The notes: generated from the sequence alone by a model not told the origin. Shown: positions 7,087-56,919, counted from the first letter of the stretch. The stretch is DNA of 64,000 nt from Penicillus capitatus (GCA_965649825.1 OZ287708.1:13001-77000); one strand, 5' to 3'. Program-made: numbers and translations.

Positions 7087-7092
7087 TTTATA
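7087..7092 (-). promoter_or_regulatory. TATA box of gene Y1
   Basis: TATAAA ~75 bp upstream of the ATG, conserved at 16910-16915 and 47973-47978. Confidence 0.65.
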
Positions 7093-17943: not shown

Positions 17944-18250
17944 TGTCGCGTAGGGTTTTAGATGGGAACAATTTGAGTGGTGGGCGCACGTAAACCTTTT
18001 TGAAACGTAAAGCCTTACAAACGAAAGACGAGATCTGTACATCGACAACGCTTTTATAGGGTACTTTATTTAAGGAACAAAGAAGGAATATTCTGAGAAG
18101 ATTCCGGAATCTACTTGGAATCTGTGACGTAGAGCCGCGGGTCTATTTGTGGATGGGAAGCTATAGAGAACCTACGACCTGTCACTTGGAGATCGACACA
18201 AGTGTAAGTAGATGAGCGCATTATCGTGAGCGCTACGCCTTAACACGACA
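17944..18250 (-). repeat. 3' LTR of element 1
   Basis: Matches 24584-24890 with one substitution seen (agccttac vs agcctaac). Preceded on the minus strand by purine-rich GAAGATAGGTGGGCCCA (18251-18267). Confidence 0.97.
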
Positions 18251-18259
18251 TGGGCCCAC

Positions 18260-21258
18260 CTATCTTCTGCCTAATCTCCGAAGGAAGTCACGATGGACAT
18301 TGTGCAGCGTCGAACCATTGGGCATACGGATATCCCAACGGTGGTCACTATGTTCTTTCACTACCACACAAGGATAGACCCATTTGGAGTATAGTTTGGA
18401 GTCGAGGCGGTCGGCCAACTTTGAGTTGTACCACGAGACCTCTGCTCCCACTTCCATGGGACGGTTCTTGACTTTCTTGTGGTGTCTTGTCTTATTTTGC
18501 TGGTGTGCCTTGATTATTCGTTGATATGCTAGTCCTCGGTCGGTGTCTAACTGTTGTGGACTAGTTGTCGTGCCGTTCCGTTGTGTGCCAGTCAGAAGGT
18601 ATTGTGGACAGAACAGAGTCGTACTATGGATCGTCCGGTTGATCTCATGTACACTCGTGCTCACATGTGTCGTCCAATCACCCCCCTTTTCCGCCCATAT
18701 CCTCCGAAGTCGATTTACGAGGTTTCGGTTGAACGCCTCGACAGTGCCCGCACTTTTGTGGGAATAGGTTGGCGTATGTAGCAGATCTATTCCGTGCTGT
18801 GCGCAGGTACTCTCGAAGCTCCTGGCAATGAAGGCGCTTCCGTTGTCGCACAGGATCCTCTGTGGAGCCCCAAAGCTTCGTGCCCATTCGAGTACCAGCT
18901 TAATAGCCTGTGCTGCCGAGCACGTCTTACATGGGCGCCCCACGCCGAACTTAGTGAAAGCGTCGATCCCGGTAGCGATATACCGAAACCCATGGCTGCC
19001 ACGGTTCAGGGGTCCTATGAAGTCTAGACACAGTGTGTGGTTCGGGGATGGACTGTCAATCATACCCAAGTCCACCTCAGATCGTGGGTTGCGAAACATT
19101 TGGCACGTCTCGCAGTTATTGACGTAATCTCGCACGTCATTGAAGTCGTTCGTCCAGCGGGTTCCGTCGGACCGCAGGTTCAGGAATGTCTTCCTTACCC
19201 CGAAGTGGCCTGCATGAGCTTTCTTGATGAGCTCGGTCCGTTCTTCCGGAGCGTAGGATACGGCGTTCACTTGATATCCCTGTTGCTTCTTCTTGGTGTG
19301 AAATTCGACAGGTGCGTTGTCTCTCCATCGGCTGAGAAGATCCGCTATCACGTTGTCCTTCCCCTCTACAAAACAGAAGTGGAGACGATCGTGGGAAAAG
19401 TGGTGCCGGAGCCAGCAATGCTGTCTCTGGATCCGGAGGTCCTTGAACTTGTGCAGGAATGTCGGCTCCTTGAGCCAATTGACCGTAGCCATGTTGTCGG
19501 AGTAAACGAATACCTCCGTCTGCTTGATCACAAAGTAACATTCCTTCAAGGCCCGTACTATTCCCATCAATTCTCCCAGAAAACTTCCGACCCTCTGTTT
19601 CGTCGTAAAAGATCCAAAGAGAACAGGTTGCAAGGTCGAGTTAAGCAATACGTATCCGAACTGGTTGAGTGGGTTACCACACCAATCCGTATACAGATGG
19701 AATGGCCCCCTTCTTTCCAACGTCAATCGGTACGTACTGATGCACAGAGATTGAACTGCGTCCTTGTAGATCTCGTCAGCTTTGGTGTAGTCATTGTGTT
19801 CGCGTTTCAGGAATGGCTTGAGTTGCGTGACGATCGCGTCGTATTTGTAACAGTACTGTGCCAGTTGCTGGCACAGACCCATGGCCTTCTGAACGTCGTG
19901 ACGTGATGTGATTGTCGGCAGCTTCTGGAGTATTGCCTGGGCCCTGTGGTACGGGTTTAGCGTCCCACCACTGAGTTCGGTACCCAAAAAGCTTACCGAT
20001 GTCTCAAACCAGTCACACTTTTGGCAGTTGATCGTCAGGCCGTATTCGTCAAAACGTTTTAATAAAAGCTTGGTCTTGTCGAGGAGTTCCTCCTCCGTTT
20101 CGCCGCCGATAAGTATGTCATCGAAGTATCGGACCACATCCAACCCTTGTAGGATGTGTGGGTCATGCGGTTATTGAAAAGCTCCGGACTGACGTTGACG
20201 CCTTGCGGCAGTCTCCGAAAGCCGTACGTCACGCCGTTCCAATGTAGTGCAAAGAAAAGCGAGATATTGTCGTCGATGGGGATGGAGCCGTAGCCGTGAA
20301 CAATGTCCACGATGGTGTATACGGTCCACTTGGGATCCACCTTCTGGATGATGTTGGACACCGGAATGATGGTCCCCCCTTGCGTTCCTTCGAGGTACGT
20401 GTTGATGTCGCGGAAGTCAATGGTGGGCCGGATCTTGCCATTCGGTTTGCGTATGAAGTTTAAAGGTGCTACGACAGCGTGTATTGCTTCTGCAACAGAC
20501 AGCTGTCGTATAACACCTTCCATGTGTAGCGAGTCGATCTCTTTTGAGATTTCCTCATTGGTGAGATCTGAAACGTAGTTCTCCCTCCAGCATGGCTTAG
20601 GCTCGCCTTGCCAACAAAGATCTCTGCCGCGTACCCTGATGTCCCACAGCCTGTTGGTCGTCGGGCGAATTGTGTCCGAAAACACCCGAGGGAATTCTTC
20701 TCTCAACTGAGCTACTGTCGTATCCTTGTCCAGTGTTGTAAGGACGCTAACGTTATGCACGCGCTTGGTCTTCTCTCTCAGCGGGTATTCCGTTCCATCG
20801 ACGTCGGCGATGGAATCAATGTTTCCTTTAGCACAACACAGTCGCATCTTGCTGGTGACGTGTTGTGGGGTATCGGATTGATTGAAGATTACCACGCTGA
20901 TTTGACCATTTGCGTGTACCTTCACCTTGCAGAAGATGTTCTTGTTATGGGTACAGTCAAAGAATGCAGTCCAAATTGTTGTTTCCGAGAACTTGAAAGG
21001 TAAGATAATGCGGCGGCTCCGAAAGGGTCCCAGCACAAAACTTCTCCCTGCCATAAAGACGATCCAGCCGTTTTGTTTGAACGGGAATAGCTCCCGATCA
21101 ATGGATTCCGTGACTTGAAGTGCTAAAGATGTTGGTCTTTCTTTCTGTCTGTCTTGGGGTGTCTCGTCCTTCCAGTTCGCCTTTACTAGTACCAAGCGTT
21201 TTATTTGCGGTTTTTGCGAGTCGTCATCTGCCTGCTGAAAAACAGGCGTGCACCTTAG
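18260..21258 (-). CDS. pol: Pol of element 1 (dUTPase-like, RT, RNase H, integrase), entered by -1 frameshift; broken by a 2-nt insertion near 20157
   Basis: VDIVHGY, LPQG, YFDD; RNase H LYTDW...ELMGIVRAL...SDN...ADLLSR; integrase HAGH...CETC with D,D(35)E. ORFs 20059-21195 and 18260-20143 rejoin as MTHILQGLDVVRYFDD if 'AC' is removed. Confidence 0.93.
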
Positions 21259-24200
21259 TTTTTTGAAACTGAGACGTTGTGGATCAAGATTTTGTTGCCT
21301 TTGTCGTCGTAGACTGCGTCCTCCTCGCAGTTGAGCTGCAACTTGAATGCTTGAAGGGCCTGCATTCCCAGAATCGGGCGTTGGACACCTTCACAGACGA
21401 CAAATGGAATCTCAGCGCTCTGTTTCCCGAGGGTACACACCAAAGCGATCTCGCCACTTGGCCTGGTCGTCTGGTTGTTGAAGCTGGTTACATCTCTAAC
21501 CTTCGACGACCTGAGGACCAAGTTGTGTCTCCTTGCCAGCTTTGCCGGAAGTATATTGGTCTGCGCACCGGTGTCCAACAGGCACGAGATTTTTCCGGCA
21601 ATATTCTCCATGTTGAGTGGGACATTATACTGTATCATCCTCTGAGAATTCTGGCGCTGTACCGGATTCGCTTGTCCTAAAGTCCCCGATTCTGTCGTCT
21701 TTGGGGCTTTCGCGAGTACAGGACAGTCTCTACCGGAGTGGCCTTTTTTATTGCATCTCTCGCAGGTGTGTCCGTACTCTTGTCGCACGCCTTGCTTGTC
21801 GTTGTTGGGAGCGTTGCTTCGTGTATTCCGTCCTCCGTGTAAGCATTCGTCGATGATCCTTTGTACACGTGGCCAGTTGCCCGCATCTCCCCATGGCAGT
21901 CCACGCAGACGTGCCTGGATTTGTGCGTTCGCAATATTGAAGATTCTCTCCGTCGCCGTAGCGTACTTGACGGGGTCATCTATCAATTCGAGCAGCTTTG
22001 ACATTCTGCGTGTGAACTGCGAGAGATTCTCTTTACGTTTTGGCAACATCCTGTGTACGTTCTTTACGGTGGGACCATCTTTCTCGACGTGTCTAGTGGG
22101 AGTCTGGCTTTTTGGAGTGTGTGGAGTTGCAGCTTCACTAGGGCGACGCTTGTCTGAGTCCTGACGTATTTGTTGACTCTGTTTCCGTTCGGTTGTTCCT
22201 TGGGTCTCGTGCGATGGCTCAGGCTCGGGGTGATGTAACTCACATCCGACTTGCTGCACTCGCATCCGATCCTCAACCGCTTCTACTCGTTGCCCGATAG
22301 TAAGTATGCTGGCCTCCACAACCTCTTCCAATCTCCCTTGTCTATTGACAAGTCTGTCCTCGAGTTCTGCAGCGCGTCTCATAAGCCCATCTTGCATCGC
22401 TTGAACACTTTCCATCAAGGATTGTATCAAGCCACGTTGTTCAGTGTCTTGGCGGACTTCCGGCGATGGGTCTGGGTGGATTTCCGTCACTGTATTTTGT
22501 TGGTCTGCCCGTCGTGGTGCCGAATGTTGCGGTGGCGGAGGCGACTGAGATGGCGCGACAGGACGAGAAGGACTGGATGACGGCGTTGACTCCTGCGGCG
22601 GTGACTGGGATGGCGGCGGTGGCGACTGTTGTGTAGGCGTTGGTGGTGACTGCTCTTGTGACGACTGCTGAGTGGTCAGTTCTTGAGTCAGTTGCTGCGC
22701 CTGAGCCCTATGTCCCCGCATCAGATTCCACACGATTCTGAGTAACCAGCAAATCCCCTGGGTTATGGCTACGACTCGCATCACAACCTTGCGGATGTTC
22801 CTGAATACATTCAAGATCCATGCAGCGACCTTGTATAGAAGCATAGCAGCGCCTACCAACTGCCAGCCGTTCCCCGTCGCCAGGGCACTACGAATTGCTC
22901 TGAGTCCAAATTTATCCCAAAGCGTGCCTAACATCCACGTGACCGCGTTATCTCGGGCACCGGTTAGCCATTTTATGAAACGGTCGAGGAATGTTTCATT
23001 CTCATGACTGTTTCCCCAACCTGTAACTTGACTCTCGCATATGCACTCGTCGAGGGCCGTCTTCAGATTTCCCGTATGTTCGTTGATTCTATATATTGTC
23101 TTCCTAATCTCGTCCAGGGTGTCGTTGAGCCGTTTCCAATCATCATTTAAACCTTTCGGGCCCCATGCGTCTTGGGAGTCCTGTTGGCCTTGAGAGTTCG
23201 TTGATGAACCGCTCATCGAGATGTTCTCGAACTGGTTCAAATCGTACAATGACTCATTGAAGGCCTTCAGTTCTCCCTCGATTTTCGGCCTGGATGGAAG
23301 GTTGTTGATGACTGAAACTGTGACAGTCGTCAATAGATTAGTCGGATAGAAGACGGAGAGTACCCCTCTGTTTGCTACCCAATTGATGACTCCGTGAGTG
23401 GTAAGGCCCACGACGGCGCTAGTCATCATCTCCGTTACGTAGTCCGGCCATGTGATATCCAAGTCTCTCATCCAAACGGGGATCGCGGCCCAAGGTTCTC
23501 TAGCGTCGAGAGGTAGAGCATTCCCTAATCCGTGCATGTCAAATACATTCTCTGGGGGAAGCTCCTGTTCGGGTCCTTGGCCTTCCTCTGACTGCGTATC
23601 TTCAACTTCAGGCTCGGATTGTGGGGTAGCCGTGTCTTCGTACGTATCCTGCTGTGCTTCGGCTGGTATTGCGTACACGAAATCTAATGCTCCGGGCTCG
23701 GTCCCGACATACAGGTCATCATATTCATCTTCCAGATACGCATCGACTGATTCGACAATCTCATCAATTTCGTCCGAGTACGTCGCTTTAGATCTCTCTT
23801 CTGGTTGTTCCTTTCCGGTTGATATGCGCTCTCCGGCAGAGAGTCCACTTTGATCTTCGGGGTCGGCTACGGGTATAGCGTATCCGAAGCGTCTGCGCAG
23901 AGCTCTCGCCGACGACATTACGGTGAAATCGTTCTTGCCGTTTCGAGGGTCTCCGTATGTCAGATCGTATACTCTCTGTCTGGACGTGTCCAGAAGTTCC
24001 TTCTGGCCCCAATTCTCAGGATGGGGTTCACCTCGGACGAGTAGAAAAAGTGAGATGTCGGTCGTTGATATTGGTCGCCCGTCCCAGTAGATCCTGGCGC
24101 CTTCGCTCAGAACCTTGATCAGCATGTTGGTTTCGCCCATGGATAGTCCCCCTGCCGCATCATAAAAGATAATGCCTTTGGGGCAACCGATGACGAATTC

Positions 24201-24560
24201 TGCGATCTCCTTCTGTATCATTCCGGCGTCGACCGAATAGTCACCCGGGGTTTTGATGTACAGAAGGCAACCTCCCTTGTGCAGATCTGGTTCCTTCCTG
24301 ATTTCGTTAGTCAGCGAGTCACATTTCCCTGTGGTACAGTATAGAATTGTGGACGTCGCTTTTTCTTGAAACAGGACAGGTTCCTTTGTATTCAAGTCGT
24401 GGGCGAGGTTAACGATGTATCCATCAATCCAGTCTTCGCCACTGCGGACGTTGTTCTGGATGCTTGTTAGAGTTTTATTCCGTAACTCTACTATTCCATC
24501 CTTCCAGCCGAACCATGCGCCGTGCGTGACGGCGGCATAGCATAGAACCCACAACAGCAT
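21255..24560 (-). CDS. gag: ORF1 of element 1: signal peptide, AAA+/torsin-like domain, coiled coil, membrane segment, Gag-like region, CCHC knuckle, aspartic protease
   Basis: MLLWVLCYAAVTHGA leader; hydrophobic W-rich region ~22710-22995; MHR-like KENLSQFTRRM; CERCNKKGHSGRDC; LLDTGA; ends in A-AAA-AAC-TAA. Confidence 0.88.
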   Translation of the reverse strand: MLLWVLCYAAVTHGAWFGWKDGIVELRNKTLTSIQNNVRSGEDWIDGYIVNLAHDLNTKEPVLFQEKATSTILYCTTGKCDSLTNEIRKEPDLHKGGCLLYIKTPGDYSVDAGMIQKEIAEFVIGCPKGIIFYDAAGGLSMGETNMLIKVLSEGARIYWDGRPISTTDISLFLLVRGEPHPENWGQKELLDTSRQRVYDLTYGDPRNGKNDFTVMSSARALRRRFGYAIPVADPEDQSGLSAGERISTGKEQPEERSKATYSDEIDEIVESVDAYLEDEYDDLYVGTEPGALDFVYAIPAEAQQDTYEDTATPQSEPEVEDTQSEEGQGPEQELPPENVFDMHGLGNALPLDAREPWAAIPVWMRDLDITWPDYVTEMMTSAVVGLTTHGVINWVANRGVLSVFYPTNLLTTVTVSVINNLPSRPKIEGELKAFNESLYDLNQFENISMSGSSTNSQGQQDSQDAWGPKGLNDDWKRLNDTLDEIRKTIYRINEHTGNLKTALDECICESQVTGWGNSHENETFLDRFIKWLTGARDNAVTWMLGTLWDKFGLRAIRSALATGNGWQLVGAAMLLYKVAAWILNVFRNIRKVVMRVVAITQGICWLLRIVWNLMRGHRAQAQQLTQELTTQQSSQEQSPPTPTQQSPPPPSQSPPQESTPSSSPSRPVAPSQSPPPPQHSAPRRADQQNTVTEIHPDPSPEVRQDTEQRGLIQSLMESVQAMQDGLMRRAAELEDRLVNRQGRLEEVVEASILTIGQRVEAVEDRMRVQQVGCELHHPEPEPSHETQGTTERKQSQQIRQDSDKRRPSEAATPHTPKSQTPTRHVEKDGPTVKNVHRMLPKRKENLSQFTRRMSKLLELIDDPVKYATATERIFNIANAQIQARLRGLPWGDAGNWPRVQRIIDECLHGGRNTRSNAPNNDKQGVRQEYGHTCERCNKKGHSGRDCPVLAKAPKTTESGTLGQANPVQRQNSQRMIQYNVPLNMENIAGKISCLLDTGAQTNILPAKLARRHNLVLRSSKVRDVTSFNNQTTRPSGEIALVCTLGKQSAEIPFVVCEGVQRPILGMQALQAFKLQLNCEEDAVYDDKGNKILIHNVSVSKN

Positions 24561-24568
24561 TGGGAGCA

Positions 24569-24583
24569 CTCGCTCCGAAACCA
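24569..24583 (-). promoter_or_regulatory. Primer-binding site of element 1
   Basis: TGGTTTCGGAGCGAG directly after the 5' LTR; a variant of the iMet-type TGGTATCAGAGC. Confidence 0.85.
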
Positions 24584-24895
24584 TGTCGCGTAGGGTTTTA
24601 GATGGGAACAATTTGAGTGGTGGGCGCACGTAAACCTTTTTGAAACGTAAAGCCTAACAAACGAAAGACGAGATCTGTACATCGACAACGCTTTTATAGG
24701 GTACTTTATTTAAGGAACAAAGAAGGAATATTCTGAGAAGATTCCGGAATCTACTTGGAATCTGTGACGTAGAGCCGCGGGTCTATTTGTGGATGGGAAG
24801 CTATAGAGAACCTACGACCTGTCACTTGGAGATCGACACAAGTGTAAGTAGATGAGCGCATTATCGTGAGCGCTACGCCTTAACACGACACGACA
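24584..24895 (-). repeat. 5' LTR of element 1, with an extra terminal 5-nt duplication (CGACA, 24891-24895)
   Basis: ...TAACACGACA CGACA then the ACGG target duplication. Confidence 0.95.
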
Positions 24896-33500: not shown

Positions 33501-34161
33501 GTTTCGCGACACGACGACGTTGATCATGTACCACACCAGCAGCAGGAAGGTGAAGGCGGCTGCAACGCCTGCCGAGTTTCGGCACGGATAGCACTTCTGA
33601 ATGACGCGGAAGTAGCCGTCGGCGCACTCCGAACACAACCTACAGCGCGGATCCGGACGACGGACGGAAACCGTGTGCTGCCCCACCTGCCCATGTGCCC
33701 CTCCTGACAGTCTCTGCCCGGTCCTCCGACGCAGCTGCTGGGAGGATCGCAGCTGTACACTTCGTTTCGCTGGAGATCTCCGGTCCAGTAACCTTCCTGC
33801 GGAACCGGCAGCCGCATTCCGCCTTCGCACGTCGCTCCCTCGGGACACGGCTCGCACGCCGTGCCCGGTTTCGTCTGGCGGTTCACGTAACCCTGCCTGC
33901 ACACACATTCCTCTACGTCCCTGGCTCCGCGGACGGTTGTCGTCGTTCCCTCCGGACAAGGCCTGCACGCCTTCTGCGCCAGCTGATCCGACCACGTCCC
34001 GATCGGGCAGTTGTCGCAGTGATCGGCGTCGACCTGATCCGAAAACTCTCCCCGCGTGCAGGCCTCGCAGGGGTCGAACGGATCCGGGCCGACATACGAG
34101 CCTGGCATGCACTTCTCCCTGTAGCGGTTCCTCGCCGGATAGTTCAGCAACTCGGTGGCGT

Positions 34162-34547
34162 TGTCGCCAAGATCTGGCTTGGCGATGTGACTGCCCAGAG
34201 GGTCACATCGCTTAAAACGGAGAAAAACCCTGGGTCTGTGAACCTTTGTAAGCCTTTTGCGTTCTGCGTTACGTGCGTGTGTAAGCGAAATCCATCCTGG
34301 ATAACGACGAAGCGCAACCGCCTTCGCGTGCAGTTGTTCCTTACCCTCCTTTGTACCAAAACACGCCATATCTGTCGGCGCTAGCGTTCTTCAGACAAGC
34401 GGAACGTGGGAGCTCTGACGTGACCGAGTCCATAGCGCAGGACGGTACCCAAGTCGACGATCGACTGGTCCATCCTGTGGAGGCAGGACCAACCGACGCA
34501 GAAGCCGACGAAGAAGCACCACGAAGGGAATTATCCCAAGAGCGACA
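34162..34547 (+). repeat. 5' LTR of element 2
   Basis: TGTCGCC...GAGCGACA; no difference seen versus 39414-39799. Confidence 0.98.
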
Positions 34548-34549
34548 AG

Positions 34550-34564
34550 TGGTTTCGGAGCGAG
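34550..34564 (+). promoter_or_regulatory. Primer-binding site of element 2
   Basis: TGGTTTCGGAGCGAG, 2 nt after the LTR; identical to the element 1 PBS. Confidence 0.88.
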
Positions 34565-34593
34565 GCTACGGCGAAGTAGAAGGGGTAGACAAG

Positions 34594-36411
34594 ATGCAGC
34601 AAAAAGCCTGGCTGTGTCTCTTTGCGTTGTTTTACCTTCTTGTCTCTGCGGCAATAATCGCGGGACACGCGGAGAATTCAACAGAGAAGGAAAGGTCGGA
34701 GAAGGAGCTCCAAGATGAGTTTAAGGAATCAGGGGCAACATTGGCTGACTTGTTACAAAGGATCAAAGCCTTAGAAAAGGAAGCGGCCGAGTTCAGGGCA
34801 GAAGCTCGGAGGGAGAGGGCCGCACGGATACAGCTGAATGAGGAGGTGCAAATACTTAGGAAGGAAAATGAGCGCCTTCGAGATCGGATGGAAGCGGAGA
34901 TTATTAACGAGGTGCTTGAGGAGGGGCAAAAATTACGTTTGGAGGCCACGAGGACATGGTGGGAGTGGCTGACGGGGACGGCTCCCCCGGGCGTGGAGGT
35001 GGAGAGAACGACCACGATCGAGGGTTGCCAAGATTTGAAGTGTTGCTTTGGAATGTGGTGGACGACCGTGGGAGAACTATTCCATCAAACAACGGATCTT
35101 ATTTATCGATTCGTGTGGGATCCATATGGCACTGGAGGCCACTGGGCATCGGGTCTGTTTAGCGCCGGCTTCTGGGGACCGGTGCTCGGAATAACGATCC
35201 TAGTGGTGGTGGTGAATCTCCTACTGCTGGCTGTCTTCCGAGCGGCTGATATATGGAAGGGAATGAAGGGGCTGGCCAGTAGGTTGGGAGGGCTGCCCAT
35301 GTTTAAGCTCGTGGGTATGGCCTTCTCGAAGCTGCGAAGGGGAGAGGGGCCAGAGGGGACCTCCCCTGAACTCCAGGAGATGCGAAGGACCGTAGAAAAG
35401 CTTCAGAAGACCGTGGAGACGAGTCAGCGGAAGGGAAAGGAGCAACGGGAGATGAGGGAGCTCCGTGGGCAGGTGGAGAACCTCATGGCCAAGTGCGAGC
35501 AACAGGCGCCTCCAGGAGAGGATGTGCAGACGAAGACCGTGAGAGAGATGCAGGCATTTTTCCAGCAGCAACTCGATCAGCTACGAAGGGAGTTCATACA
35601 TACGGGGAAGCAACCAGGACCTGCACCGATCCCGGTGGATATGTCTCCCCGTCGGAGGCAGAATCCTGGTTCAATGCCACCAGGGGGGAGGCAACGCTAC
35701 TGTGAGCGCTGCAAGAAATGGCATCCGGGACTTGAGTGCTGGGATTGCACCAAGTGCAGAACGTGTGGTGCAACAGGAATGTGCGAACACCGGGCAAAGA
35801 TCGTGGAGAACAACCGAAGACGATCCCCTACTCCCAGGCCGGAGAGGACGAGAGCTGTGGCGGTATGTGAGCGGGAGGAGTCTGAAGCGATGTGGGATTG
35901 GGACGCGAGGTTAGTGGAGGAGGCATCGCAAACGGGATCTTCAATCTCCTTCTCGACGAAAGGGGAGGGAAGTGGAGAACCGGGCACACAAGAGTCGGTC
36001 GTTGCGGTGGTGGACAAAGAGGCTAAGGGATACCGTCTGCGAGGACACTTGGCTGTGGGAGGAGGGGTAGCTCCTTGCACGTTCCTTATCGACACTGGCT
36101 CGGAAGTGAATTTGCTGAGTGAGAAGACGTGCACGCGCCTAGGAGTGGGTATTCAGTCGGCAGGACCTGACAAGCCAAACTTGGCAGGGGTGTCCGGAGA
36201 GCGGTTAGAGGTGACGGGGCAGGCGATCTTAGAGACTCGGTTTGGTCAAGAGGAGGGGAAGGCGATTCGTTATTGGGTCGCGAAGAACGTAAGAGACATA
36301 ATTGGGATTCCTGGAATAGGGCAGCTGGGGATTTCATTGACGAACCCGGGTCACATGGCAGTGTTTCCCTCGGGGCAGAAACTTTTTTGTCAGGTGGTGC
36401 AAAAAAACTAA
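34594..36411 (+). CDS. ORF1 of element 2 (605 aa): signal peptide, coiled coil, W-rich segment, TM helix, coiled coil, Cys/His Zn-binding cluster, aspartic protease; no capsid recognised
   Basis: MQQKAWLCLFALFYLLVSAAIIAG leader; GPVLGITILVVVVNLLLLAVF; CERCKKWHPGLECWDCTKCRTC; FLIDTGS; ends A-AAA-AAC-TAA. Confidence 0.88.
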   Translation: MQQKAWLCLFALFYLLVSAAIIAGHAENSTEKERSEKELQDEFKESGATLADLLQRIKALEKEAAEFRAEARRERAARIQLNEEVQILRKENERLRDRMEAEIINEVLEEGQKLRLEATRTWWEWLTGTAPPGVEVERTTTIEGCQDLKCCFGMWWTTVGELFHQTTDLIYRFVWDPYGTGGHWASGLFSAGFWGPVLGITILVVVVNLLLLAVFRAADIWKGMKGLASRLGGLPMFKLVGMAFSKLRRGEGPEGTSPELQEMRRTVEKLQKTVETSQRKGKEQREMRELRGQVENLMAKCEQQAPPGEDVQTKTVREMQAFFQQQLDQLRREFIHTGKQPGPAPIPVDMSPRRRQNPGSMPPGGRQRYCERCKKWHPGLECWDCTKCRTCGATGMCEHRAKIVENNRRRSPTPRPERTRAVAVCEREESEAMWDWDARLVEEASQTGSSISFSTKGEGSGEPGTQESVVAVVDKEAKGYRLRGHLAVGGGVAPCTFLIDTGSEVNLLSEKTCTRLGVGIQSAGPDKPNLAGVSGERLEVTGQAILETRFGQEEGKAIRYWVAKNVRDIIGIPGIGQLGISLTNPGHMAVFPSGQKLFCQVVQKN

Positions 36412-36437
36412 AGGGCTCTCCCGCGCAGACGGGAGAG
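36402..36437 (+). promoter_or_regulatory. -1 programmed frameshift signal
   Basis: Slippery AAAAAAC (36402-36408), 7-nt spacer, 8-bp stem CTCTCCCG/CGGGAGAG. The -1 frame is the pol ORF. Confidence 0.85.
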
Positions 36438-39383
36438 GGGGGTGGTACTTTGAAAAGGGATAAAAGAAAACAAAAAGAGGGGGAAATCAGCACGCTCTGT
36501 TGTAAGAGCGTTTCATTAAAGCAACTGTGGGTATATGAGCCGAAGTGGCGCATTTTATGCAGGGGGAACGTGCTGCAACTGCCATTGGGCAAGACCACAT
36601 ACATCCCACCCAGGGAATCAATGCGGGTTTGTTTGCCCTGGGAGGTCAGGGGCGCAGATTTGACCGGTTTTTTCTCTCTACTGCATCGTAAGGAGGTATC
36701 GGTATCAAGCCAGTTTAGCGCAAAGTCGGGACGGATCCATGTGTTGTTGCTTAATTTCGGATCGGAGGTGGCTGTCATAGCTGCCAAAACGTTTGTCCTG
36801 GGTGTGGGGTCGCAAGGGTCGTTCTTTCATGTGTGCACGGCCGATGGGCGAGAACATCAGTTGTCTAATGGTATGGGGGTTGAGTGTGGGGCGAAGGGAT
36901 GGGCGGTTGCGAGCGTTAGCTCGGAGCCAAAATTTTTTGCCCAGTTCCCTCAGTTGTTTTGTGAAGATACGTGTCGGATTCCGGAGCACATGCAAAGGTT
37001 TCGGGTCCGGAAGGACGACATTTCTTGGGTGGGGGACATGATCTATCGGGGGAAGTGTGCGGTCAATGTGGAAAATCTGGTCCCGGCGCGGGCCATAGAT
37101 GAGACGGTTGAATCGATGCTGCGTGATGGCTATGTGGAGGAGGTGGGGGACAGTTCGTCGCTCATGTTGCATCCGTTGATCTTCCTCCCGAAGCCAGACG
37201 GGCGTACGCGCTTAGTCATCGATTTACGACGTATCAATGGTCATACACGACACACGAGGGGGGGACTACCAGCGATACATACTGTGTTTCGCCAAGTGCC
37301 GACCACATGGCGTTTTTTTTGTAAAATTGATATTAAGAATGGTTACCATAGGGTACCAGTGGAACGTTCATTGGGGGATTTATTTGCATTTGGTATACGC
37401 CGCCGTTTCTTTCGATACAAGGTATTGCCTCAGGGATGGGCGGCTAGTCCGCATATTTTCCATGCTGTCATGATGGAAATATGCTCTGGCCATGAGGCAA
37501 TACATTATATTGATGACATAATACTGGGGGCGTCGACCCTAAATGAATTGACTGCGCGGGTTTCTGCTCTGTTAGCCACCCTACAGAAATACGGATTGCA
37601 GATACAGCAGAAGAAGTTTCTTTTTGGAAAGGAATCTGTAGAGTTCTTGGGTTTTGAGCTCCGGAGTGGGGGGCGTGTGAGTGCTGAAAGCTATTTACAG
37701 AAGCGAAGGGAGGCACTGGAAGGTCGAATAGAAACAAAAAGAGACCTGCAGAGTCTGCTGGGGACATTGAACGTCGCTCGGCACTTCGTACCAGGGCTCA
37801 GCCAAAAGACGGCTGGGTTGCAGAAGTTGTTGCTGGCTATGGCGAGCAGTAGCTTGGGGACGGAAGAAAAGGAGCAGGCTCACGAGTTGGCGAAGAAGGC
37901 CTGGGGGGAGGTGTTGGAATCCTGTGTAACAGTGCAGATGGCGATGCCAGAGAAGGCCAGATTTGAGTTGTACACGGATTGGTCAACGGAGGCGATGGGA
38001 TACGTCCTTTTTGCTGAAGGGGAGGACGGGCGTCATATCACAGACATCAACTCCACAAGGGCAGTCGAGCGGACAGCCGTGAGCAGCTTCCTGGGGGAGC
38101 TGCGGGGAATTGTGTGGGCACTGAAGAAGACGCGACATATCGTCTGGACCTCGGCAATCAAGGTCTGCTGTGACAATCAAGGCACAGTAGCTCGCTTGCA
38201 GAAGGGGGATGTCATGGGGGATGATGTTCGATGTTCTCGACTCATGGGATGGCTGTGGGGAAACTTCCCCCAAGTACAGTTTGAGTATGTACCTGGCGCA
38301 ATCAACCAAGTGGCAGATTACCTGAGTCGGAGAAAAGGCCAGCAGAAGGAGGGGAAGGTGGTAGGAGCAGTTATGCTTCAGCAGCGGCCTCTCGTTGACG
38401 TGGTAAGGAGCCGTCTGGAAAAGGCACATCAGGGTCACTGGCACGCAGAAAGGACGTGGCAACATCTGAAACGGGATGGCCCGGTTTGGCCGGGAGCAAG
38501 GAAGGAGGTGTTCCAGTATGTGGAGCAGTGCCCCAATTGCCAACATTTTCGTGGCTTAGAGCACCGGGAACCATGGACGGGGATGGAGATAACTCACCCA
38601 AACGATGTTGTTTTCGGAGATTTTCTGGGGCCTATTACTTTGAGTCGGGGGCGAGGAAAACGAGTCCTTCTGGTGTTGGTCGACGGTTTCAGTCGCATCA
38701 CGCACTTACACGTGGCTAAGACTCCCACGGAAAGAACGGTCCTGCGAGGATTGAAGCGATGGGAACAAGCTTTATCATGGAAACATGGACATATTCGTAT
38801 GTTCATGGCAGATAGAGGAGCGGCATTCATCGGCGGAGGGGTTCGAGCATTCTGTGAGGAGCATGGGATCAAGCAACGGTGGTCGCCAAGTCATGCACCT
38901 TGGTGCAATGGTGCAGCAGAGCGACAGGTGGGAAACGTGAAGACAAGATTGGCCAAGATACTCTGGAAGTCTGCCGAGGACATCTCTATCCATACGTTGG
39001 AGGAGATTTTGAACCAAGGGATTTGCGAGACCACGGGTTTCACACCCATGGAATTGTGCTGGGGAAGACGACGTGACGGCAGCTTGATGACGGACATGGA
39101 GTGGGAGCAGGCCATGCACCTCGCTCAACAGAAAAGAGCGGCTGGGCGACAGAGGGACAGGGAAGCATACCTTCGAAAATTTTCGAGCAAGCCGCCGCTA
39201 CAGACAGGACAATGGGTTCTGGCGTATGAACCTCATAGAAAGCGCCATGCACTCCATTCGCCGTGGACAGGTCCTCACCTAACTGCGGAGCCGCGGGGGT
39301 CGAGATTATGGATGGTGTGGAAAAATGGAAGTTCTCGAAGAGTGGGACCATTTCATGCAGAACATTTGCGGTTATATTGCTAG
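36408..39383 (+). CDS. pol: Pol of element 2 (dUTPase-like, RT, RNase H, integrase)
   Basis: KIDIKNGY, LPQG, YIDD; LYTDW...ELRGIVWAL...CDN...ADYLSR; HQGH...CPNC; GDF, ADRG, AAER; no stops. Confidence 0.95.
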   Translation, partial: LKGSPAQTGEGGGTLKRDKRKQKEGEISTLCCKSVSLKQLWVYEPKWRILCRGNVLQLPLGKTTYIPPRESMRVCLPWEVRGADLTGFFSLLHRKEVSVSSQFSAKSGRIHVLLLNFGSEVAVIAAKTFVLGVGSQGSFFHVCTADGREHQLSNGMGVECGAKGWAVASVSSEPKFFAQFPQLFCEDTCRIPEHMQRFRVRKDDISWVGDMIYRGKCAVNVENLVPARAIDETVESMLRDGYVEEVGDSSSLMLHPLIFLPKPDGRTRLVIDLRRINGHTRHTRGGLPAIHTVFRQVPTTWRFFCKIDIKNGYHRVPVERSLGDLFAFGIRRRFFRYKVLPQGWAASPHIFHAVMMEICSGHEAIHYIDDIILGASTLNELTARVSALLATLQKYGLQIQQKKFLFGKESVEFLGFELRSGGRVSAESYLQKRREALEGRIETKRDLQSLLGTLNVARHFVPGLSQKTAGLQKLLLAMASSSLGTEEKEQAHELAKKAWGEVLESCVTVQMAMPEKARFELYTDWSTEAMGYVLFAEGEDGRHITDINSTRAVERTAVSSFLGELRGIVWALKKTRHIVWTSAIKVCCDNQGTVARLQKGDVMGDDVRCSRLMGWLWGNFPQVQFEYVPGAINQVADYLSRRKGQQKEGKVVGAVMLQQRPLVDVVRSRLEKAHQGHWHAERTWQHLKRDGPVWPGARKEVFQYVEQCPNCQHFRGLEHREPWTGMEITHPNDVVFGDFLGPITLSRGRGKRVLLVLVDGFSRITHLHVAKTPTERTVLRGLKRWEQALSWKHGHIRMFMADRGAAFIGGGVRAFCEEHGIKQRWSPSHAPWCNGAAERQVGNVKTRLAKILWKSAEDISIHTLEEILNQGICETTGFTPMELCWGRRRDGSLMTDMEWEQAMHLAQQKRAAGRQRDREAYLRKFSSKPPLQTGQWVLAYEPHRKRHALHSPWTGPHLTAEPRGSRLWMVWKNGSSRRVGPFHAEHLRLYC

Positions 39384-39413
39384 GGTGATCGTCAGAGTTG
39401 GCGGGAAGCGTGG

Positions 39414-39799
39414 TGTCGCCAAGATCTGGCTTGGCGATGTGACTGCCCAGAGGGTCACATCGCTTAAAACGGAGAAAAACCCTGGGTCTGTGAACCTTTG
39501 TAAGCCTTTTGCGTTCTGCGTTACGTGCGTGTGTAAGCGAAATCCATCCTGGATAACGACGAAGCGCAACCGCCTTCGCGTGCAGTTGTTCCTTACCCTC
39601 CTTTGTACCAAAACACGCCATATCTGTCGGCGCTAGCGTTCTTCAGACAAGCGGAACGTGGGAGCTCTGACGTGACCGAGTCCATAGCGCAGGACGGTAC
39701 CCAAGTCGACGATCGACTGGTCCATCCTGTGGAGGCAGGACCAACCGACGCAGAAGCCGACGAAGAAGCACCACGAAGGGAATTATCCCAAGAGCGACA
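39414..39799 (+). repeat. 3' LTR of element 2
   Basis: Identical to the 5' LTR; preceded by purine-rich AGAGTTGGCGGGAAGCGTGG. Confidence 0.98.
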
Positions 39800-41519
39800 G
39801 GCGTGTCCGACCGGCAAGACGGGAACGATCTTTCGGCACGTCCTCCCGCTATCGTCCTCGGACACGACCACCTGCGTCGTCACCGGATCCAGGAGTACGT
39901 TGCGTCGATACTCGTTGAACTCGACGCCGCCGAAGAAGGTCTCCTCCATCTCCAGGGCGGCCAGAGCGTCGAGCACGCGTTGATATCCGTTGCCGCCCCC
40001 ATCTCCGTCGCACTGGATCGCGCTCTCGTCGTAAAGCAGCGCGTCGACGTCTCCCAGAGTCGCCGAGATATCGCAGTCGACGAAGGCCTCTCGAATGGCC
40101 TGCGTCAGCGTCAGCCCGACAGCAGAGGCTCCGGCCGCCACGTACGTCGGCGTCTGGCCGTCGAACCTCTCCCGGTATCTCTGCGCATAACCCTGCGCCG
40201 AACCGAAGAAGGCGTCCTGGTAGTTCAGTCCGTGGTGCCACTGCGCGGCGCTGAGCAGGTCGTCTGCCACATAGGGCGGCTCGAAGGCGTCCACCCATTC
40301 CTGCTTCGTCGGGCCCACCGTCAGGAAGAAGCCCTTCAGGGGATACCGGATCCGGTGAAAGGCTTCGACCAGAGCCTTGCCGTCGTCCGGAAAGACGCAC
40401 GCCACGACGACTTCGATCTCGTTGTCCCGGACATCTTTGGCGATCTCCAGAGCTGCGTCATCCGTCAGGGTCTGGTTGAAGGCGTACATCACGCGGATGC
40501 CGCTCTCCATCATCCACACGCCGTTCGAGTCACGGTAGAAACCGCTGGCCGCTTCGCACGTCGTGCGCGTGAACGGATCGTCCTGCTGGGAAACGAACAC
40601 CATGGTGCGGACGTCGGCCACTTGCATGGTCCGAATGACCAGCTTCGTGTACTGCAAGTTGGAGACCTGGATGCCGTAGACGGTGCGGTGATTCTGCCGG
40701 TAGAGGTAGTCGGGCCCAACACAGCAGTGGTAGTTCAGGACATCAGCTTCACTGGCCAGACGCATCTGCGTTTCGGCAAAGGCTGGATGGGACCCTCCGA
40801 GGAAGTGCACTCTCTCCTTTCCGATGAGCTTCTGCACTTGTCGCCGATGCAGCTCCGCATCGCTGCGGTCCTCGCGGGCGAGAAAACGGAACTGGAAATG
40901 GAATCCCCCTGTGGCGTTCTTTCCTTTGAGCCAGAATCCGCGGTTGTCGTTTTCCGCGTTGACGGTCTCGAAGTACAGCTGGTAGCCATTCCTCGCCTCG
41001 ACGAAGTCCCTCTTTGCGCCAATCGTGCTGAAGACGCCGCCGAAACGGAAGGCCGAATCGGCTGCGACGCCAATCGCGAACAGGAGACAGAGAAAAAGCT
41101 TCATGCAATAGCGCAGGGACAGGAAACGCATTGAAGGTGTGGTTGTCTGTCTGTTAGTAAATCTGCCTCGTAATGATTGCGTACTCCAGTCGTACACGTG
41201 CAGACCTTCGGCCATCTTTCGTAGACTCGGCTAACAATCCACCTCGGATGACAGTGTCCAATCGTTTTCAGTACAGCGCAAGTCAACGACGGTCTCGTAG
41301 ACAGCAGATGACTGAGCTTTAGACAGTGAAGCACGGCTTCTGATCGAAGGTCGGTTTGCGAAGACGGGACCCGAGCTTAGGAGTGAGATGGACAGCTGAT
41401 GATTGAGGGCGTCGACAGTGCTTTGCGTCCCACCGTCCGGAGTGCGCCAGGGCGGCAGATTGTCGTTGGAACGGGCCGGTGTGCCGCTGCATCCTTATCG
41501 AAATCGTCCATGCCGTTGC

Positions 41520-56360: not shown

Positions 56361-56919
56361 AACACGATAAGACGTTCAGGAACTTCCGCTTTGGTGCTTG
56401 ACGATTGTCTGGGAAAGGGTTCTCATAAGAGACCCTTTCTTCAGAAATTCGCTGCGTTCCGAAGAACGTAGCGGGGCATTGGATATAGTTTTCAACCAGC
56501 AATAGTCGCACCTCAGCTTAGCCTCATTGGTTGCGACATTGCCCCAAGCGCAAGGATGACACAACACGAGCAGGCAGATTAGATAGTCTGACCCCCTAAC
56601 TTCCGCTTCTGTTATGCCAGATCTGTAAAGACGGCGCAAAGCGCCTTCAAAAATTGCGAATACGGCTTTGTTGGGGACGGAGCTCGGTATTCTTTAGTAA
56701 AAGGCGAAAGAATAGCACGCCACCAGACCCGACCCCGCCGCACAACACGCTCCGCAACGGAAGATTTATCGATACAAAACGAAATTCCGCTTAGTCTTTT
56801 CGTTCTCCGAGGCAGGATGACTCGACTGACGCGACTGAATCGATAACACTTATACTTAAAATAACAGCGATCCTGCGATGTCTGTGTGTCCTAGTCGCCC
56901 TTAAAATGCAAAAAAAACT

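What the first reader, a model, noticed from the sequence alone, without database searches (positions are those of the whole stretch)
34162..39799. Two elements define an apparently distinct 'membrane-Gag' Ty3/gypsy lineage, one potentially active
Shared characters: TGTCG/CGACA termini, the same PBS, a signal-peptide/TM ORF1 with a coiled coil ending in a W-L-T-G motif (KWLTG / EWLTG), PR in ORF1, A-AAA-AAC shift, pseudo-dUTPase, RNase H LYTDW...SFLGEL.GIV.AL, and no chromodomain. Their ORF1 ectodomains differ entirely, suggesting modular ectodomain swapping. Element 2 has identical LTRs and open ORFs.
Basis: partly seen in the sequence, partly recalled or inferred. Interest (0 to 1): 0.85.

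Follow-up and report, generated by a model that had tools for sequence, protein, structure and literature searches.

The report
Retrotransposons with a membrane-anchored Gag substitute
Two LTR retrotransposons in this window belong to a much larger, undescribed Ty3/gypsy-like lineage, found in metagenomes and in the green seaweed Caulerpa, whose first gene appears to encode a membrane-spanning protein joined to an RNA-binding knuckle and a protease in place of a normal capsid-forming Gag, which points to a capsid-free, membrane-based way of building a retroelement particle.

Summary
Both elements are real. E2 (34162-39799, +) has identical 386-bp LTRs, a 5-bp target duplication, open ORF1 and pol, and a 99.6% identical second copy at another locus. 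E1 (17944-24890, -) has 307-bp LTRs with one mismatch; its pol carries one frameshift. They share TGTCG/CGACA ends, an identical 15-nt primer-binding site, protease inside ORF1, an in-phase A AAA AAC slip site abutting the ORF1 stop, and no chromodomain or env ORF.

Both ORF1s read: N-terminal hydrophobic signal, helical ectodomain, strong transmembrane segment, long cytosolic helices, Cys-His knuckle, retropepsin. No capsid domain was detected by Pfam, PDB profiles or profile-profile comparison.

The plan is not limited to two elements. A profile search found 1811 relatives. Of 56 near-complete ORF1s among the best 150, 41 have a transmembrane-like segment upstream of the protease and 22 of those end in ..KN. 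The only named host is Caulerpa lentillifera.

Two shared characters did not hold up. The 'W-L-T-G' motif is at chance level. The 'pseudo-dUTPase' has no support from sequence or profile tests. Placement among named Ty3/gypsy clades could not be tested. I found no published description. Verdict: a new variant of a known kind, known only from computation.

The parts
34157..34161 (.). E2 target-site duplication, left copy (GGCGT)
   Evidence: the same 5 nt lie at 39800-39804
34162..34547 (+). E2 5' LTR, 386 bp, TGTCG...CGACA
   Evidence: 386/386 identical to the 3' LTR
34550..34565 (+). E2 primer-binding site, 2 nt after the LTR; read in frame as V-S-E-R-G
   Evidence: translation
34594..36411 (+). 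E2 ORF1 (605 aa + stop). Hydrophobic signal aa 5-23 (34606-34662); N-x-T sequon aa 28; long helix aa 50-127; Cys loop aa 145-151; aromatic-rich juxtamembrane aa 150-196; TM aa 197-215 (35182-35238); cytosolic helices aa 258-337; Cys-His cluster aa 370-399 (35701-35790); retropepsin aa 490-570 (36061-36303)
   Evidence: The frame is also open upstream into the LTR, with an in-frame ATG at 34420
36402..36408 (+). E2 slippery heptamer A AAA AAC, in X XXY YYZ phase, directly before the ORF1 stop
36416..36437 (+). E2 8-bp G+C-rich hairpin 7 nt after the heptamer (probable frameshift stimulator)
   Evidence: -18.3 kcal/mol, z -2.5, 4/200 shuffles fold as well
36408..39383 (+). E2 pol in the -1 frame (991 codons after the slip). 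Conserved pre-RT domain of unknown fold; RT 37188-37661; RNase H 37944-38195; integrase Zn + core 38415-38897; no chromodomain
   Evidence: best solved relative: Ty3 Gag-Pol, E 2.5e-30
39397..39413 (+). E2 purine-rich tract directly before the 3' LTR (probable PPT)
   Evidence: read from the sequence
39414..39799 (+). E2 3' LTR
39800..39804 (.). E2 target-site duplication, right copy (GGCGT)
24584..24890 (-). E1 5' LTR (element orientation), 307 bp; its last base is the A of the ORF1 ATG
   Evidence: 306/307 identical to the other LTR
24569..24583 (-). E1 primer-binding site, directly after the LTR; identical to that of E2; encodes (M)VSER
21255..24584 (-). E1 ORF1 (1109 aa + stop). Signal peptide; about 570-aa ectodomain with 5 N-glycosylation sequons; hydrophobic stretch aa ~385-425; helices aa 478-570; TM aa 576-594 followed by an amphipathic hydrophobic helix aa 600-618; Pro-rich linker; 74-residue helix; CCHC knuckle aa 941-954; retropepsin aa ~990-1085
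21258..21264 (-). E1 slippery heptamer A AAA AAC, in phase, directly before the ORF1 stop
18260..21264 (-). E1 pol (pre-RT domain, RT, RNase H, integrase). Broken: one frameshift, no premature stop
   Evidence: A relative with 89% identical ORF1 has an uninterrupted pol
17944..18250 (-). E1 3' LTR (element orientation), preceded by a PPT-like tract ending GGTGGGCCCA
   Evidence: The same 10-nt tract end is seen in relative L002

Best explanation
E2 and E1 are autonomous LTR retrotransposons of a deep, undescribed branch of the Ty3/gypsy (Metaviridae-like) group. In this branch the structural gene does not encode a capsid-forming Gag. It encodes an integral membrane polyprotein.

Shown by sequence:
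- LTR/PBS/PPT/TSD anatomy.
- The order PR-(pre-RT domain)-RT-RNase H-IN, with PR in the ORF1 frame.
- Pol reached by a -1 shift at A AAA AAC lying directly before the ORF1 stop.
- ORF1 laid out as hydrophobic N-terminus, helical ectodomain with a Cys loop and an aromatic-rich juxtamembrane stretch, a very hydrophobic 19-23-residue segment followed by basic residues, then long helices, a Cys-His knuckle and a retropepsin.
- An ORF1 start codon that in E1 and most relatives is made of the last LTR base plus the first two PBS bases. The first residues (M-V-S-E-R) are therefore PBS-encoded and identical across divergent elements.

Inferred mechanism:
- The protein is inserted co-translationally as a type I membrane glycoprotein.
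- Its cytosolic tail binds the element's RNA through the knuckle and oligomerises through the long helices. This replaces a capsid lattice, much as the coiled coil plus nucleic-acid-binding module of LINE ORF1p does.
- About one ribosome in some tens frameshifts and adds RT-RH-IN to the same membrane anchor.
- The protease then releases the enzymes.
- Reverse transcription would thus take place in a membrane-attached or membrane-wrapped assembly.
- The ectodomain is short and stalk-like in E2 and large with glycosylation sequons in E1. It is the exchangeable outward-facing module and may act in membrane bending or fusion.

E2 is structurally intact and young. E1 has a broken pol.
For: - Anatomy.
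- Domains: PR, RT, RNase H, IN by Pfam; nearest solved pol is Ty3, E 2.5e-30; the only confident fold match of the ORF1 model is retropepsin.
- Membrane features: one search gives KD means up to 3.0. One search shows that the TM block and the stretch before it contain the densest run of invariant columns in the ectodomain/TM half, and that an N-x-T sequon directly after the N-terminal hydrophobic segment is conserved. Basic residues follow the TM.
- The same plan occurs in relatives with 31-34% pol identity: L002 and Caulerpa lentillifera P0017.
- Breadth: 1811 proteins match at E<=1e-3, 95 at E<=1e-10 and 9 at E<=1e-30. In one search, 88, of 56 near-complete ORF1 hits among the best 150, 41 have a TM-like segment upstream of PR. 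Of those 41, 22 end in KN, against 1 of the 15 without a TM-like segment. Fifteen carry a C-x4-CC loop within 110 residues upstream of a TM-like segment.
- No capsid: Pfam gag families absent in both window ORF1s and in 10/10 TM-type relatives. PDB profile searches hit only retropepsins and generic coiled coils. hhalign against conventional Gag-PR proteins aligns only knuckle+PR (E 1e-21) or PR alone (E 5e-13), and nothing in their capsid region.
- Purifying selection on ORF1 among relatives: dN/dS 0.08-0.36 wherever synonymous sites are not saturated.
- Youth and copy number of E2: identical LTRs, a TSD, and a second copy at 99.6% identity in a different flank.
Against: - Membrane insertion rests on hydropathy and helix prediction only; no dedicated topology predictor was available.
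- Both AlphaFold models are poor (mean pLDDT 49.6 and 32.1). Neither the fold of the ectodomain nor the absence of a small capsid-like bundle is therefore established. E1 has three short helices at aa 853-915 that could be a remnant.
- Pfam found a gag domain in only 2 of 10 conventional controls, so its silence is weak evidence.
- Heptad periodicity is not significant for the E2 helices.
- In four relatives a conserved, selected reading frame extends 105-145 codons upstream into the LTR. If translated, the 'signal peptide' would be an internal signal-anchor and the protein a two-pass hairpin.
- E1 has a second marginal hydrophobic segment after its TM (KD 1.8).
- There are no expression or protein data of any kind.
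Confidence: 0.55

Rival explanations
1. Env-first endogenous-retrovirus reading. The N-terminal half of ORF1 is a genuine viral-type fusion glycoprotein of class I style: hydrophobic peptide, long helix, disulfide loop, second helix, aromatic juxtamembrane region, TM. It was acquired upstream of, and fused to, a capsid-less Gag remnant. The element would spread between cells or individuals as an enveloped particle whose envelope protein and nucleocapsid are one chain until cleaved.
For: - The order of features in the E2-type ectodomain.
- E1 adds a large N-terminal domain with glycosylation sequons and an internal hydrophobic stretch before the helices, like a receptor-binding subunit followed by a fusion subunit.
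- The juxtamembrane region is 26% W/F/Y, against 7% for the whole protein.
- Ectodomains are exchanged between families, as env genes are.
- ENV-GAG-POL gene order exists in mite Ty3/gypsy elements (PMC13524379).
Against: - No sequence or profile match to any solved fusion protein.
- The fold search is uninformative outside the protease.
- The models are low-confidence.
- Heptad signal is weak in E2.
- No cleavage site between putative subunits was identified.
- E2-type ectodomains (about 170 aa) have no receptor-binding part.
Confidence: 0.25
2. Ordinary but very divergent Gag. The hydrophobic segments are buried helices or membrane-peripheral anchors of a cytosolic Gag, whose capsid domain has diverged beyond detection. 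The element would then assemble conventional cytosolic virus-like particles.
For: - Capsid domains of Ty3/gypsy elements are notoriously hard to detect. Only 2/10 conventional controls hit Pfam Retrotrans_gag.
- E1 has a short three-helix region before its knuckle.
Against: - 19-residue windows with KD 2.4-3.0 made almost only of L/V/I/A/F are not typical of soluble helices.
- The N-terminal segment has signal-peptide form and is followed by a conserved N-x-T sequon.
- The E2 cytosolic region between TM and knuckle is about 150 aa, mostly two long helices and a Pro/Arg linker. This is too short and of the wrong shape for a two-domain capsid.
- hhalign finds nothing against the capsid part of conventional Gag-PR proteins.
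Confidence: 0.12
3. Chimeric or annotation artefact. ORF1 is an accidental read-through of a host membrane-protein gene fragment into a Gag-less retroelement, peculiar to these copies.
For: Ectodomains have no homologues outside the family, and they differ between E1 and E2.
Against: - The same continuous ORF plan recurs in dozens of 50%-identity clusters from different samples and sources, and in Caulerpa.
- It lies between the PBS and the slip site inside intact LTR pairs with TSDs.
- It evolves under purifying selection.
Confidence: 0.03

Closest known systems
Ty3/gypsy (Metaviridae) LTR retrotransposons, e.g. yeast Ty3
   Same: LTRs with TG..CA ends and a 5-bp TSD; PBS next to the 5' LTR and a purine tract before the 3' LTR; PR-RT-RNase H-IN order; Cys-His knuckle before PR. 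The best solved relative of the pol is Ty3 Gag-Pol.
   Different: ORF1 has a signal-like N-terminus and a TM segment and no detectable capsid domain. PR is in the ORF1 frame. A conserved extra domain precedes RT. Pol is only 22-27% identical to the conventional Ty3/gypsy pols retrieved.
Envelope-carrying Ty3/gypsy elements of animals (errantiviruses; GAG-POL-ENV, GAG-ENV-POL, and ENV-GAG-POL in oribatid mites; PMC13524379)
   Same: A Ty3/gypsy-type element that encodes a membrane glycoprotein-like module, in some cases upstream of gag.
   Different: In those elements env is a separate ORF of a recognisable viral type (F-type or gB-type) and a separate capsid-bearing Gag is kept. Here there is one chain, no recognisable env family and no capsid domain, and the hosts are not animals as far as can be told.
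sORF2 of Drosophila MDG1-group retrotransposons (FAST-like small transmembrane protein; PMC11952523)
   Same: An env-less LTR retrotransposon encoding a small single-pass membrane protein with a short ectodomain, proposed to act on membranes for transfer.
   Different: sORF2 is a separate protein, compared by its describers with 100-200-residue FAST proteins, and the element keeps a normal capsid. There is no covalent link to nucleocapsid or protease.
Glycosylated Gag of gammaretroviruses (from general knowledge, not tested here)
   Same: A membrane-inserted form of the structural polyprotein, produced by an N-terminal extension that starts upstream of the normal start codon. This may parallel the conserved ATG-less LTR-encoded extension seen in relatives L003-L005.
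   Different: It is an accessory isoform with the opposite orientation (Gag outside), and the capsid domain is present.
ORF1p of non-LTR retrotransposons (coiled coil plus RNA-binding module or CCHC knuckles; PMC5940361, PMC4120745)
   Same: A capsid-less structural protein: long helices for oligomerisation followed by a nucleic-acid-binding module. This is what the cytosolic tail of the algal ORF1 looks like.
   Different: It is not membrane-anchored and carries no protease, and it belongs to a different retroelement class. A generic coiled-coil match to L1 ORF1p at E 0.5 is not homology.
Ty1/copia-type arrangement in which the gag ORF starts before the PBS (from general knowledge, not tested here)
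   Same: The PBS lies inside the coding sequence of the first ORF.
   Different: Here the start codon itself straddles the LTR/PBS junction, and the PBS encodes the residues directly preceding a signal sequence.

Membership tests
Ty3/gypsy-type LTR retrotransposon | Direct LTRs with TG...CA termini flanked by a 4-6 bp target-site duplication | tested here: met
   E2: 386-bp identical LTRs, TSD GGCGT. E1: 307-bp LTRs, TSD only 4 nt (or 5 with a mismatch) once an extra terminal pentamer is allowed for. L002: 549-bp identical LTRs, TSD CGACG.
Ty3/gypsy-type LTR retrotransposon | PBS next to the 5' LTR and polypurine tract before the 3' LTR | tested here: met
   An identical 15-nt TGG-initiated PBS in E1, E2, L002-L006. 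Purine-rich tracts before the 3' LTRs. The priming tRNA was not identified.
Ty3/gypsy-type LTR retrotransposon | Pol domain order PR-RT-RNase H-IN (integrase last) | tested here: met
   Pfam coordinates. Nearest solved structures are Ty3 Gag-Pol and Ty3 RT.
Ty3/gypsy-type LTR retrotransposon | Gag with capsid domain plus nucleocapsid knuckle | tested here: not met
   The knuckle is present. No capsid domain by Pfam, PDB profile searches or hhalign against conventional Gag-PR proteins. The sensitivity of these tests is limited.
Named Ty3/gypsy clades (GyDB / REXdb) | RT/RH/IN phylogenetic placement within a reference clade | not testable with these tools
   No reference clade sequences are available. 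The only result is that E1 and the E2 clade group apart from five unnamed conventional pols.
Chromoviruses | Chromodomain at the integrase C-terminus | tested here: not met
   No chromodomain hit in either pol at E<=0.1.
Env-carrying Ty3/gypsy (errantivirus-like) | Separate env ORF in addition to gag and pol | tested here: not met
   Only two ORFs. E2 pol stops 30 nt before the 3' LTR. The membrane module is part of ORF1.
Class I viral fusion glycoprotein | Trimeric helical hairpin fold with fusion peptide, two heptad regions and TM anchor | tested here: inconclusive
   The linear order of features fits. But the models are low-confidence, the fold search hits only the protease, there are no sequence matches, and heptad periodicity is significant in one E1 helix only.
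dUTPase (trimeric, as inserted in some retroelement pols) | dUTPase fold and conserved motifs | tested here: not met
   No hit by phmmer or profile against PDB, or by Pfam or PHROGs at E<=10. hhalign against E. coli Dut gives probability 0.16% over 18 columns.
Programmed -1 ribosomal frameshift site | X XXY YYZ heptamer in the zero frame, open -1 frame, downstream structure after a 5-9 nt spacer | tested here: met
   Heptamer phase and open frames in E2, E1, L002 and L006. In L002 the -1 frame opens only 12 nt before the site. An 8-bp hairpin lies after a 7-nt spacer in E2 (z -2.5). Downstream structure is weak in E1 and L002.

The most novel reading that the evidence does not exclude
A whole lineage of retroelements, spread through marine and other metagenomes and present in siphonous green algae, has dispensed with the capsid. 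One membrane-spanning polyprotein would carry an outward-facing, exchangeable (possibly fusogenic) ectodomain and an inward-facing nucleocapsid-protease(-polymerase) tail. Envelope and core functions would then be one chain, and particles (or membrane-bound replication compartments) would be built without a Gag lattice. In some members an N-terminal extension encoded in the LTR without an ATG would add a second, cytosolic domain.
Probability: 0.3. Interest if true: 0.9.

Novelty: new variant of a known kind. Interest (0 to 1): 0.72.

Why it matters
All well-studied LTR retroelements and retroviruses build a protein shell from a capsid domain of Gag. Membrane proteins, where present, are separate env or accessory genes. 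A large lineage in which the only structural protein is an integral membrane protein fused to the nucleocapsid knuckle and protease would be a third solution to retroelement assembly, besides capsid-based Gag and the capsid-less ribonucleoprotein of LINEs. It would also bear on how envelope functions are gained and exchanged.

It would add an unrecognised retroelement group to green-algal, and probably other protist, genomes. Such elements are easily mis-binned: one member is deposited as a protein of a bacterial MAG.

The start codon built across the LTR/PBS junction is a neat oddity. The first residues of the protein lie within the primer-binding site, which is identical across otherwise divergent elements.

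Tried and rejected
- **Fold assignment of ORF1.** AlphaFold2 on the family alignments gave mean pLDDT 49.6 (E2) and 32.1 (E1). Foldseek against the PDB matched only retropepsins, so no conclusion was drawn on the ectodomain or capsid from folds. The other two fold-search jobs were not spent on such models.
- **dUTPase.** Five sequence or profile tests were negative.
- **W-L-T-G as a synapomorphy.** Rejected by a shuffle test.
- **Simple heptad test.** Not significant for the E2 helices, so 'coiled coil' is downgraded to 'long predicted helices'.
- **Host identification.** There are no tRNA genes, and Rfam found only U4 and U5. Cluster look-ups of host and element proteins gave unnamed ENA/Logan/JGI entries, apart from one EukProt Caulerpa entry and one mis-binned bacterial MAG.
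- **Empty-site test of whether E2 splits one host ORF.** The upstream host ORF does run across the joined site, but the two host ORFs are in different frames, so the result is left open.
- **Literature.** Six full-text searches found no description of an LTR element with a transmembrane Gag-protease ORF. The nearest items are ENV-GAG-POL mite elements and sORF2.
- **Self-priming.** The PBS or its complement is not repeated inside the LTRs at up to 2 mismatches.

Full report
**1. What is at the coordinates**

The finding's interval 34162-39799 is exactly one LTR retrotransposon, here called E2.
- Its two LTRs are 386 bp and identical at every base (34162-34547 and 39414-39799).
- They begin TGTCG and end CGACA.
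- The element is flanked by a perfect 5-bp duplication, GGCGT.

The 'other element' of the finding, E1, lies at 17944-24890 on the minus strand.
- Its LTRs are 307 bp with one mismatch and have the same terminal pentamers.
- One extra tandem copy of the terminal pentamer lies just outside its 5' LTR. Allowing for it, the target duplication is 4 nt, or 5 nt with one mismatch.

**2. Shared non-coding signals**

The 15-mer TGGTTTCGGAGCGAG occurs exactly twice in the 64-kb window, once per element. It lies directly after the 5' LTR in E1 and 2 nt after it in E2. Chance expectation is 0.14 matches even with two mismatches allowed. The same PBS is found in five related loci from two metagenome assemblies. 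No tRNA gene is present in the window, and I did not identify the primer.

Both elements carry A AAA AAC in X XXY YYZ phase directly before the ORF1 stop, with the -1 frame open across it.
- In E2 an 8-bp G+C-rich hairpin starts 7 nt downstream (-18.3 kcal/mol, z = -2.5).
- In E1 and in relative L002 the downstream structure is weak.
- In L002 the -1 frame opens only 12 nt before the heptamer, which pins the shift to this site.

**3. Coding content**

ORF2 has RT, RNase H, the integrase zinc domain and the integrase core, in that order, with no chromodomain. Its best solved relative is the Ty3 Gag-Pol polyprotein (E 2.5e-30), followed by foamy-virus, caulimovirus and gammaretrovirus enzymes.

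E2 pol is open for 991 codons after the slip site and stops 30 nt before the 3' LTR, so there is no third ORF. E1 pol carries one frameshift and no premature stop. A relative from the same assembly with an 89% identical ORF1 has an uninterrupted pol of 1010 codons, so intact copies of the E1 type exist.

A conserved stretch of about 100-200 residues precedes RT in both families (alignment A3). Five tests give no support:
- phmmer and a family profile against all PDB sequences;
- Pfam and PHROGs at E<=10;
- hhalign against E. coli Dut, probability 0.16%.

The fold was not predicted. The claim stays open but unsupported.

**4. ORF1, the heart of the finding**

E2 ORF1 (605 aa counted from the ATG at 34594) reads as follows:
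- a 19-residue hydrophobic N-terminus (KD mean 2.4), then an N-x-T sequon that is conserved in relatives;
- a predicted 78-residue helix;
- a Cys loop (C-x4-CC);
- a stretch with 26% aromatic residues;
- a 19-residue segment of KD 3.0, followed by basic residues;
- two long helices;
- a Cys-His cluster;
- a D-T-G retropepsin.

E1 ORF1 (1109 aa) has the same order but a far larger ectodomain:
- a classical signal-peptide-like start;
- about 570 aa of ectodomain with five N-glycosylation sequons, an acidic linker, an internal hydrophobic stretch and helices;
- a TM segment plus an amphipathic hydrophobic helix;
- a proline-rich linker and a 74-residue helix;
- a CCHC knuckle and the retropepsin.

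The two ORF1s align only at the knuckle and protease. The 'W-L-T-G' motif they share is what chance gives. Shuffled ectodomains share on average 1.25 four-mers, and 70% of shuffles share at least one. The motif also varies within the E2 family.

**5. No capsid domain was detected**
- Pfam finds no gag family in either ORF1 or in ten TM-type relatives.
- Family profiles against the PDB hit only retropepsin-like proteases and generic coiled coils.
- hhalign against an alignment of conventional Gag-PR proteins aligns knuckle+protease for the E2 family (E 1e-21) and protease for the E1 family (E 5e-13). Nothing aligns in the 195 profile columns that hold their capsid region.

Caveats:
- Pfam recognised gag in only 2 of 10 conventional controls.
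- Both structure models are poor (pLDDT 49.6 and 32.1).
- E1 has a short three-helix region before its knuckle.

In E2 the whole space between TM and knuckle is about 150 residues of long helices and a Pro/Arg linker, which is not the shape of a two-domain capsid.

**6. The start codon**

In E1, L002-L006 and their proteins, the ORF1 ATG is the last base of the LTR plus the TG of the PBS. The PBS is therefore read as (M)-V-S-E-R-(G/V). These residues are identical in elements whose pols are about 30% identical.

E2 has two extra bases between LTR and PBS, which removes this ATG. Its next ATG lies 15 codons downstream of that position, directly before the hydrophobic segment.

Unexplained: in four relatives (L002-L005) the same frame stays open 105-145 codons upstream into the LTR. 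It is the only open frame there and evolves with dN/dS 0.11-0.36. Yet three of the four have no upstream ATG. If translated, for instance from a non-AUG codon, the 'signal peptide' would be an internal signal-anchor.

**7. How far the plan extends**

Word-indexed searches found only 5 and 4 relatives of the two ORF1s, all from ENA metagenome assemblies. The pol search added a locus with 31-32% pol identity whose upstream ORF has the same plan. It also added EukProt protein EP00210_Caulerpa_lentillifera_P008353. This is a fused gene model with signal-like start, helix, C-x4-CC loop, TM, knuckle, protease and pol.

A profile of the E2-type ORF1 plus the Caulerpa protein, run against 1.84 billion representatives, matched 1811 proteins at E<=1e-3, 95 at E<=1e-10 and 9 at E<=1e-30. 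Among the best 150:
- 56 are near-complete ORF1s;
- 41 of these have a TM-like segment upstream of the protease;
- 22 of those 41 end in ..KN (the slip site at the stop), against 1 of the 15 without a TM-like segment;
- 15 have the C-x4-CC loop within 110 residues upstream of a TM-like segment.

Ectodomain sizes run from about 150 to more than 700 residues. The twenty clusters I looked up come from ENA, Logan and JGI assemblies. One member is deposited as a hypothetical protein of a 'Spirochaetales bacterium' MAG, evidently mis-binned. The lineage is therefore real, sizeable and essentially unannotated.

**8. Are E1 and E2 one lineage?**

Their pols are 26% identical over 640 residues.
- E1 scores 175-207 bits against E2-clade pols, but 47-92 bits against the five conventional Ty3/gypsy pols retrieved.
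- E2 scores 187 bits against E1, but 90-112 bits against those five.
- A neighbour-joining tree puts E1 (with its relative) next to the E2/L002/Caulerpa clade. The five conventional pols fall on the other side, with bootstrap 100 and 97.

Together with the identical PBS, the slip site at the stop and the ORF1 plan, this favours common descent.

**9. Age and activity**

E2 has identical LTRs, a perfect TSD and open reading frames with catalytic motifs in place. It also has a second copy, 99.6% identical (21 mismatches, no gaps over 5251 nt), in a different flank on a 777-kb contig. That is the signature of a recently amplified family. It is not proof of activity.

E2 sits between two host ORFs on the minus strand:
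- a periplasmic-binding/ANF-receptor-type ORF that now reads into the 3' LTR;
- a TRP-like membrane ORF that starts 50 nt from the 5' LTR.

In the joined empty site the former ORF runs across the junction, so a host gene or its intron is probably interrupted.

**10. Host**

The window shows 46-62% G+C in 2-kb windows, mostly 48-56%. It has long intron-free ORFs (VWA + C-type lectin, receptor-type proteins, FAST-kinase-like) and U4 and U5 snRNA genes. The contigs have the naming style of long-read metagenome assemblies. The only named carrier of the lineage is the siphonous green alga Caulerpa lentillifera. 'Algal' is thus a reasonable but unproven guess for the window itself.

**11. Mechanism**

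Shown:
- the anatomy;
- the frameshift signal;
- the domain order;
- conservation of, and purifying selection on, the membrane-type ORF1.

Inferred:
- ORF1 is inserted as a type I membrane glycoprotein.
- Its cytosolic tail (long helices plus knuckle) oligomerises and binds the RNA, in the manner of a LINE ORF1p rather than a capsid.
- Frameshifting tethers RT-RH-IN to the same anchor, and the protease releases them.
- The ectodomain is an exchangeable outward module that may bend or fuse membranes.

I put about 0.55 on the membrane-anchored, capsid-less structural protein. I put about 0.25 on the stronger reading that the ectodomain is a true fusogen of an enveloped, transmissible particle, and about 0.12 on a merely divergent cytosolic Gag.

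**12. Comparison with what is known**

The elements work like Ty3/gypsy retrotransposons for everything downstream of the protease. They pass the LTR, PBS/PPT and domain-order tests, but fail the 'Gag with capsid' test as far as it could be applied. They are not chromoviruses, and they are not env-carrying elements in the usual sense, because there is no separate env ORF.

The nearest published ideas are these:
- ENV-GAG-POL and GAG-ENV-POL orders in animal Ty3/gypsy elements (PMC13524379);
- the FAST-like small TM protein sORF2 of Drosophila MDG1-group elements (PMC11952523);
- from general knowledge, the N-terminally extended membrane isoform of gammaretroviral Gag.

None of these has the membrane module, knuckle and protease in one chain without a capsid. 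Six full-text searches found no description of such an architecture. Subscription journals and Repbase are not covered by these searches.

**13. Verdict**

The thing is a new variant of a known kind, and of real interest to retroelement biology. All evidence so far is computational.

Noticed in passing
window 56427-56557 (-) and 56629-56742 (-): U4 and U5 spliceosomal snRNA genes side by side (Rfam 106.7 and 69.4 bits), directly downstream of a FAST-kinase-like ORF at 54348-56360 (-).
   Followed up: no
window about 876-8100, 10851-17930, 42214-48500: A unit of about 7-10 kb is present three times at 72-96% identity (a local gene-family or segmental repeat). E1 is inserted directly at the end of the second copy.
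   Followed up: no
window 31443-34112 (-) and 39593-41215 (-): E2 lies between a TRP-like membrane ORF and a periplasmic-binding/ANF-receptor-type ORF that now reads into the 3' LTR. In the joined empty site the latter ORF crosses the junction, so E2 probably interrupts a receptor-type host gene or its intron.
   Followed up: partly
window 25602-27821 (+); L001 1-886: An intron-free 739-aa ORF with VWA and C-type lectin domains. A gene with the same domains lies next to the second E2 copy on another contig.
   Followed up: no
L002 830-1264, L003 1201-1563, L004 1201-1539, L005 1201-1515: A conserved reading frame inside the 5' LTR, in frame with ORF1 and upstream of the PBS-borne ATG (105-145 codons, dN/dS 0.11-0.36). 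It lacks an ATG in three of the four elements. It may be a non-AUG-initiated N-terminal extension.
   Followed up: partly
window 24891-24895: An extra tandem copy of the 5-nt LTR terminus just outside the E1 LTR. With it, the target duplication is 4 nt (ACGG), or 5 nt with one mismatch.
   Followed up: partly
window 18251-18260 (-) and L002 5874-5883: E1 and the distant relative L002 share the same 10-nt end of the tract before the 3' LTR (GGTGGGCCCA). E2 has a different purine-rich tract.
   Followed up: no
protein cluster P0032 (member P0173, NCBI MCG8453617.1): A member of this eukaryotic retroelement ORF1 family is deposited as a hypothetical protein of a 'Spirochaetales bacterium' MAG, which points to a mis-binned eukaryotic contig.
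   Followed up: no
protein cluster P0081 (12 members, one on the 776749-bp contig that also holds L001): A third family of large (about 1000 aa) ORF1s in the same assembly, with a very hydrophobic TM (KD 3.1), a knuckle and a protease. It ends in ..PN rather than ..KN, so its recoding signal may differ.
   Followed up: no
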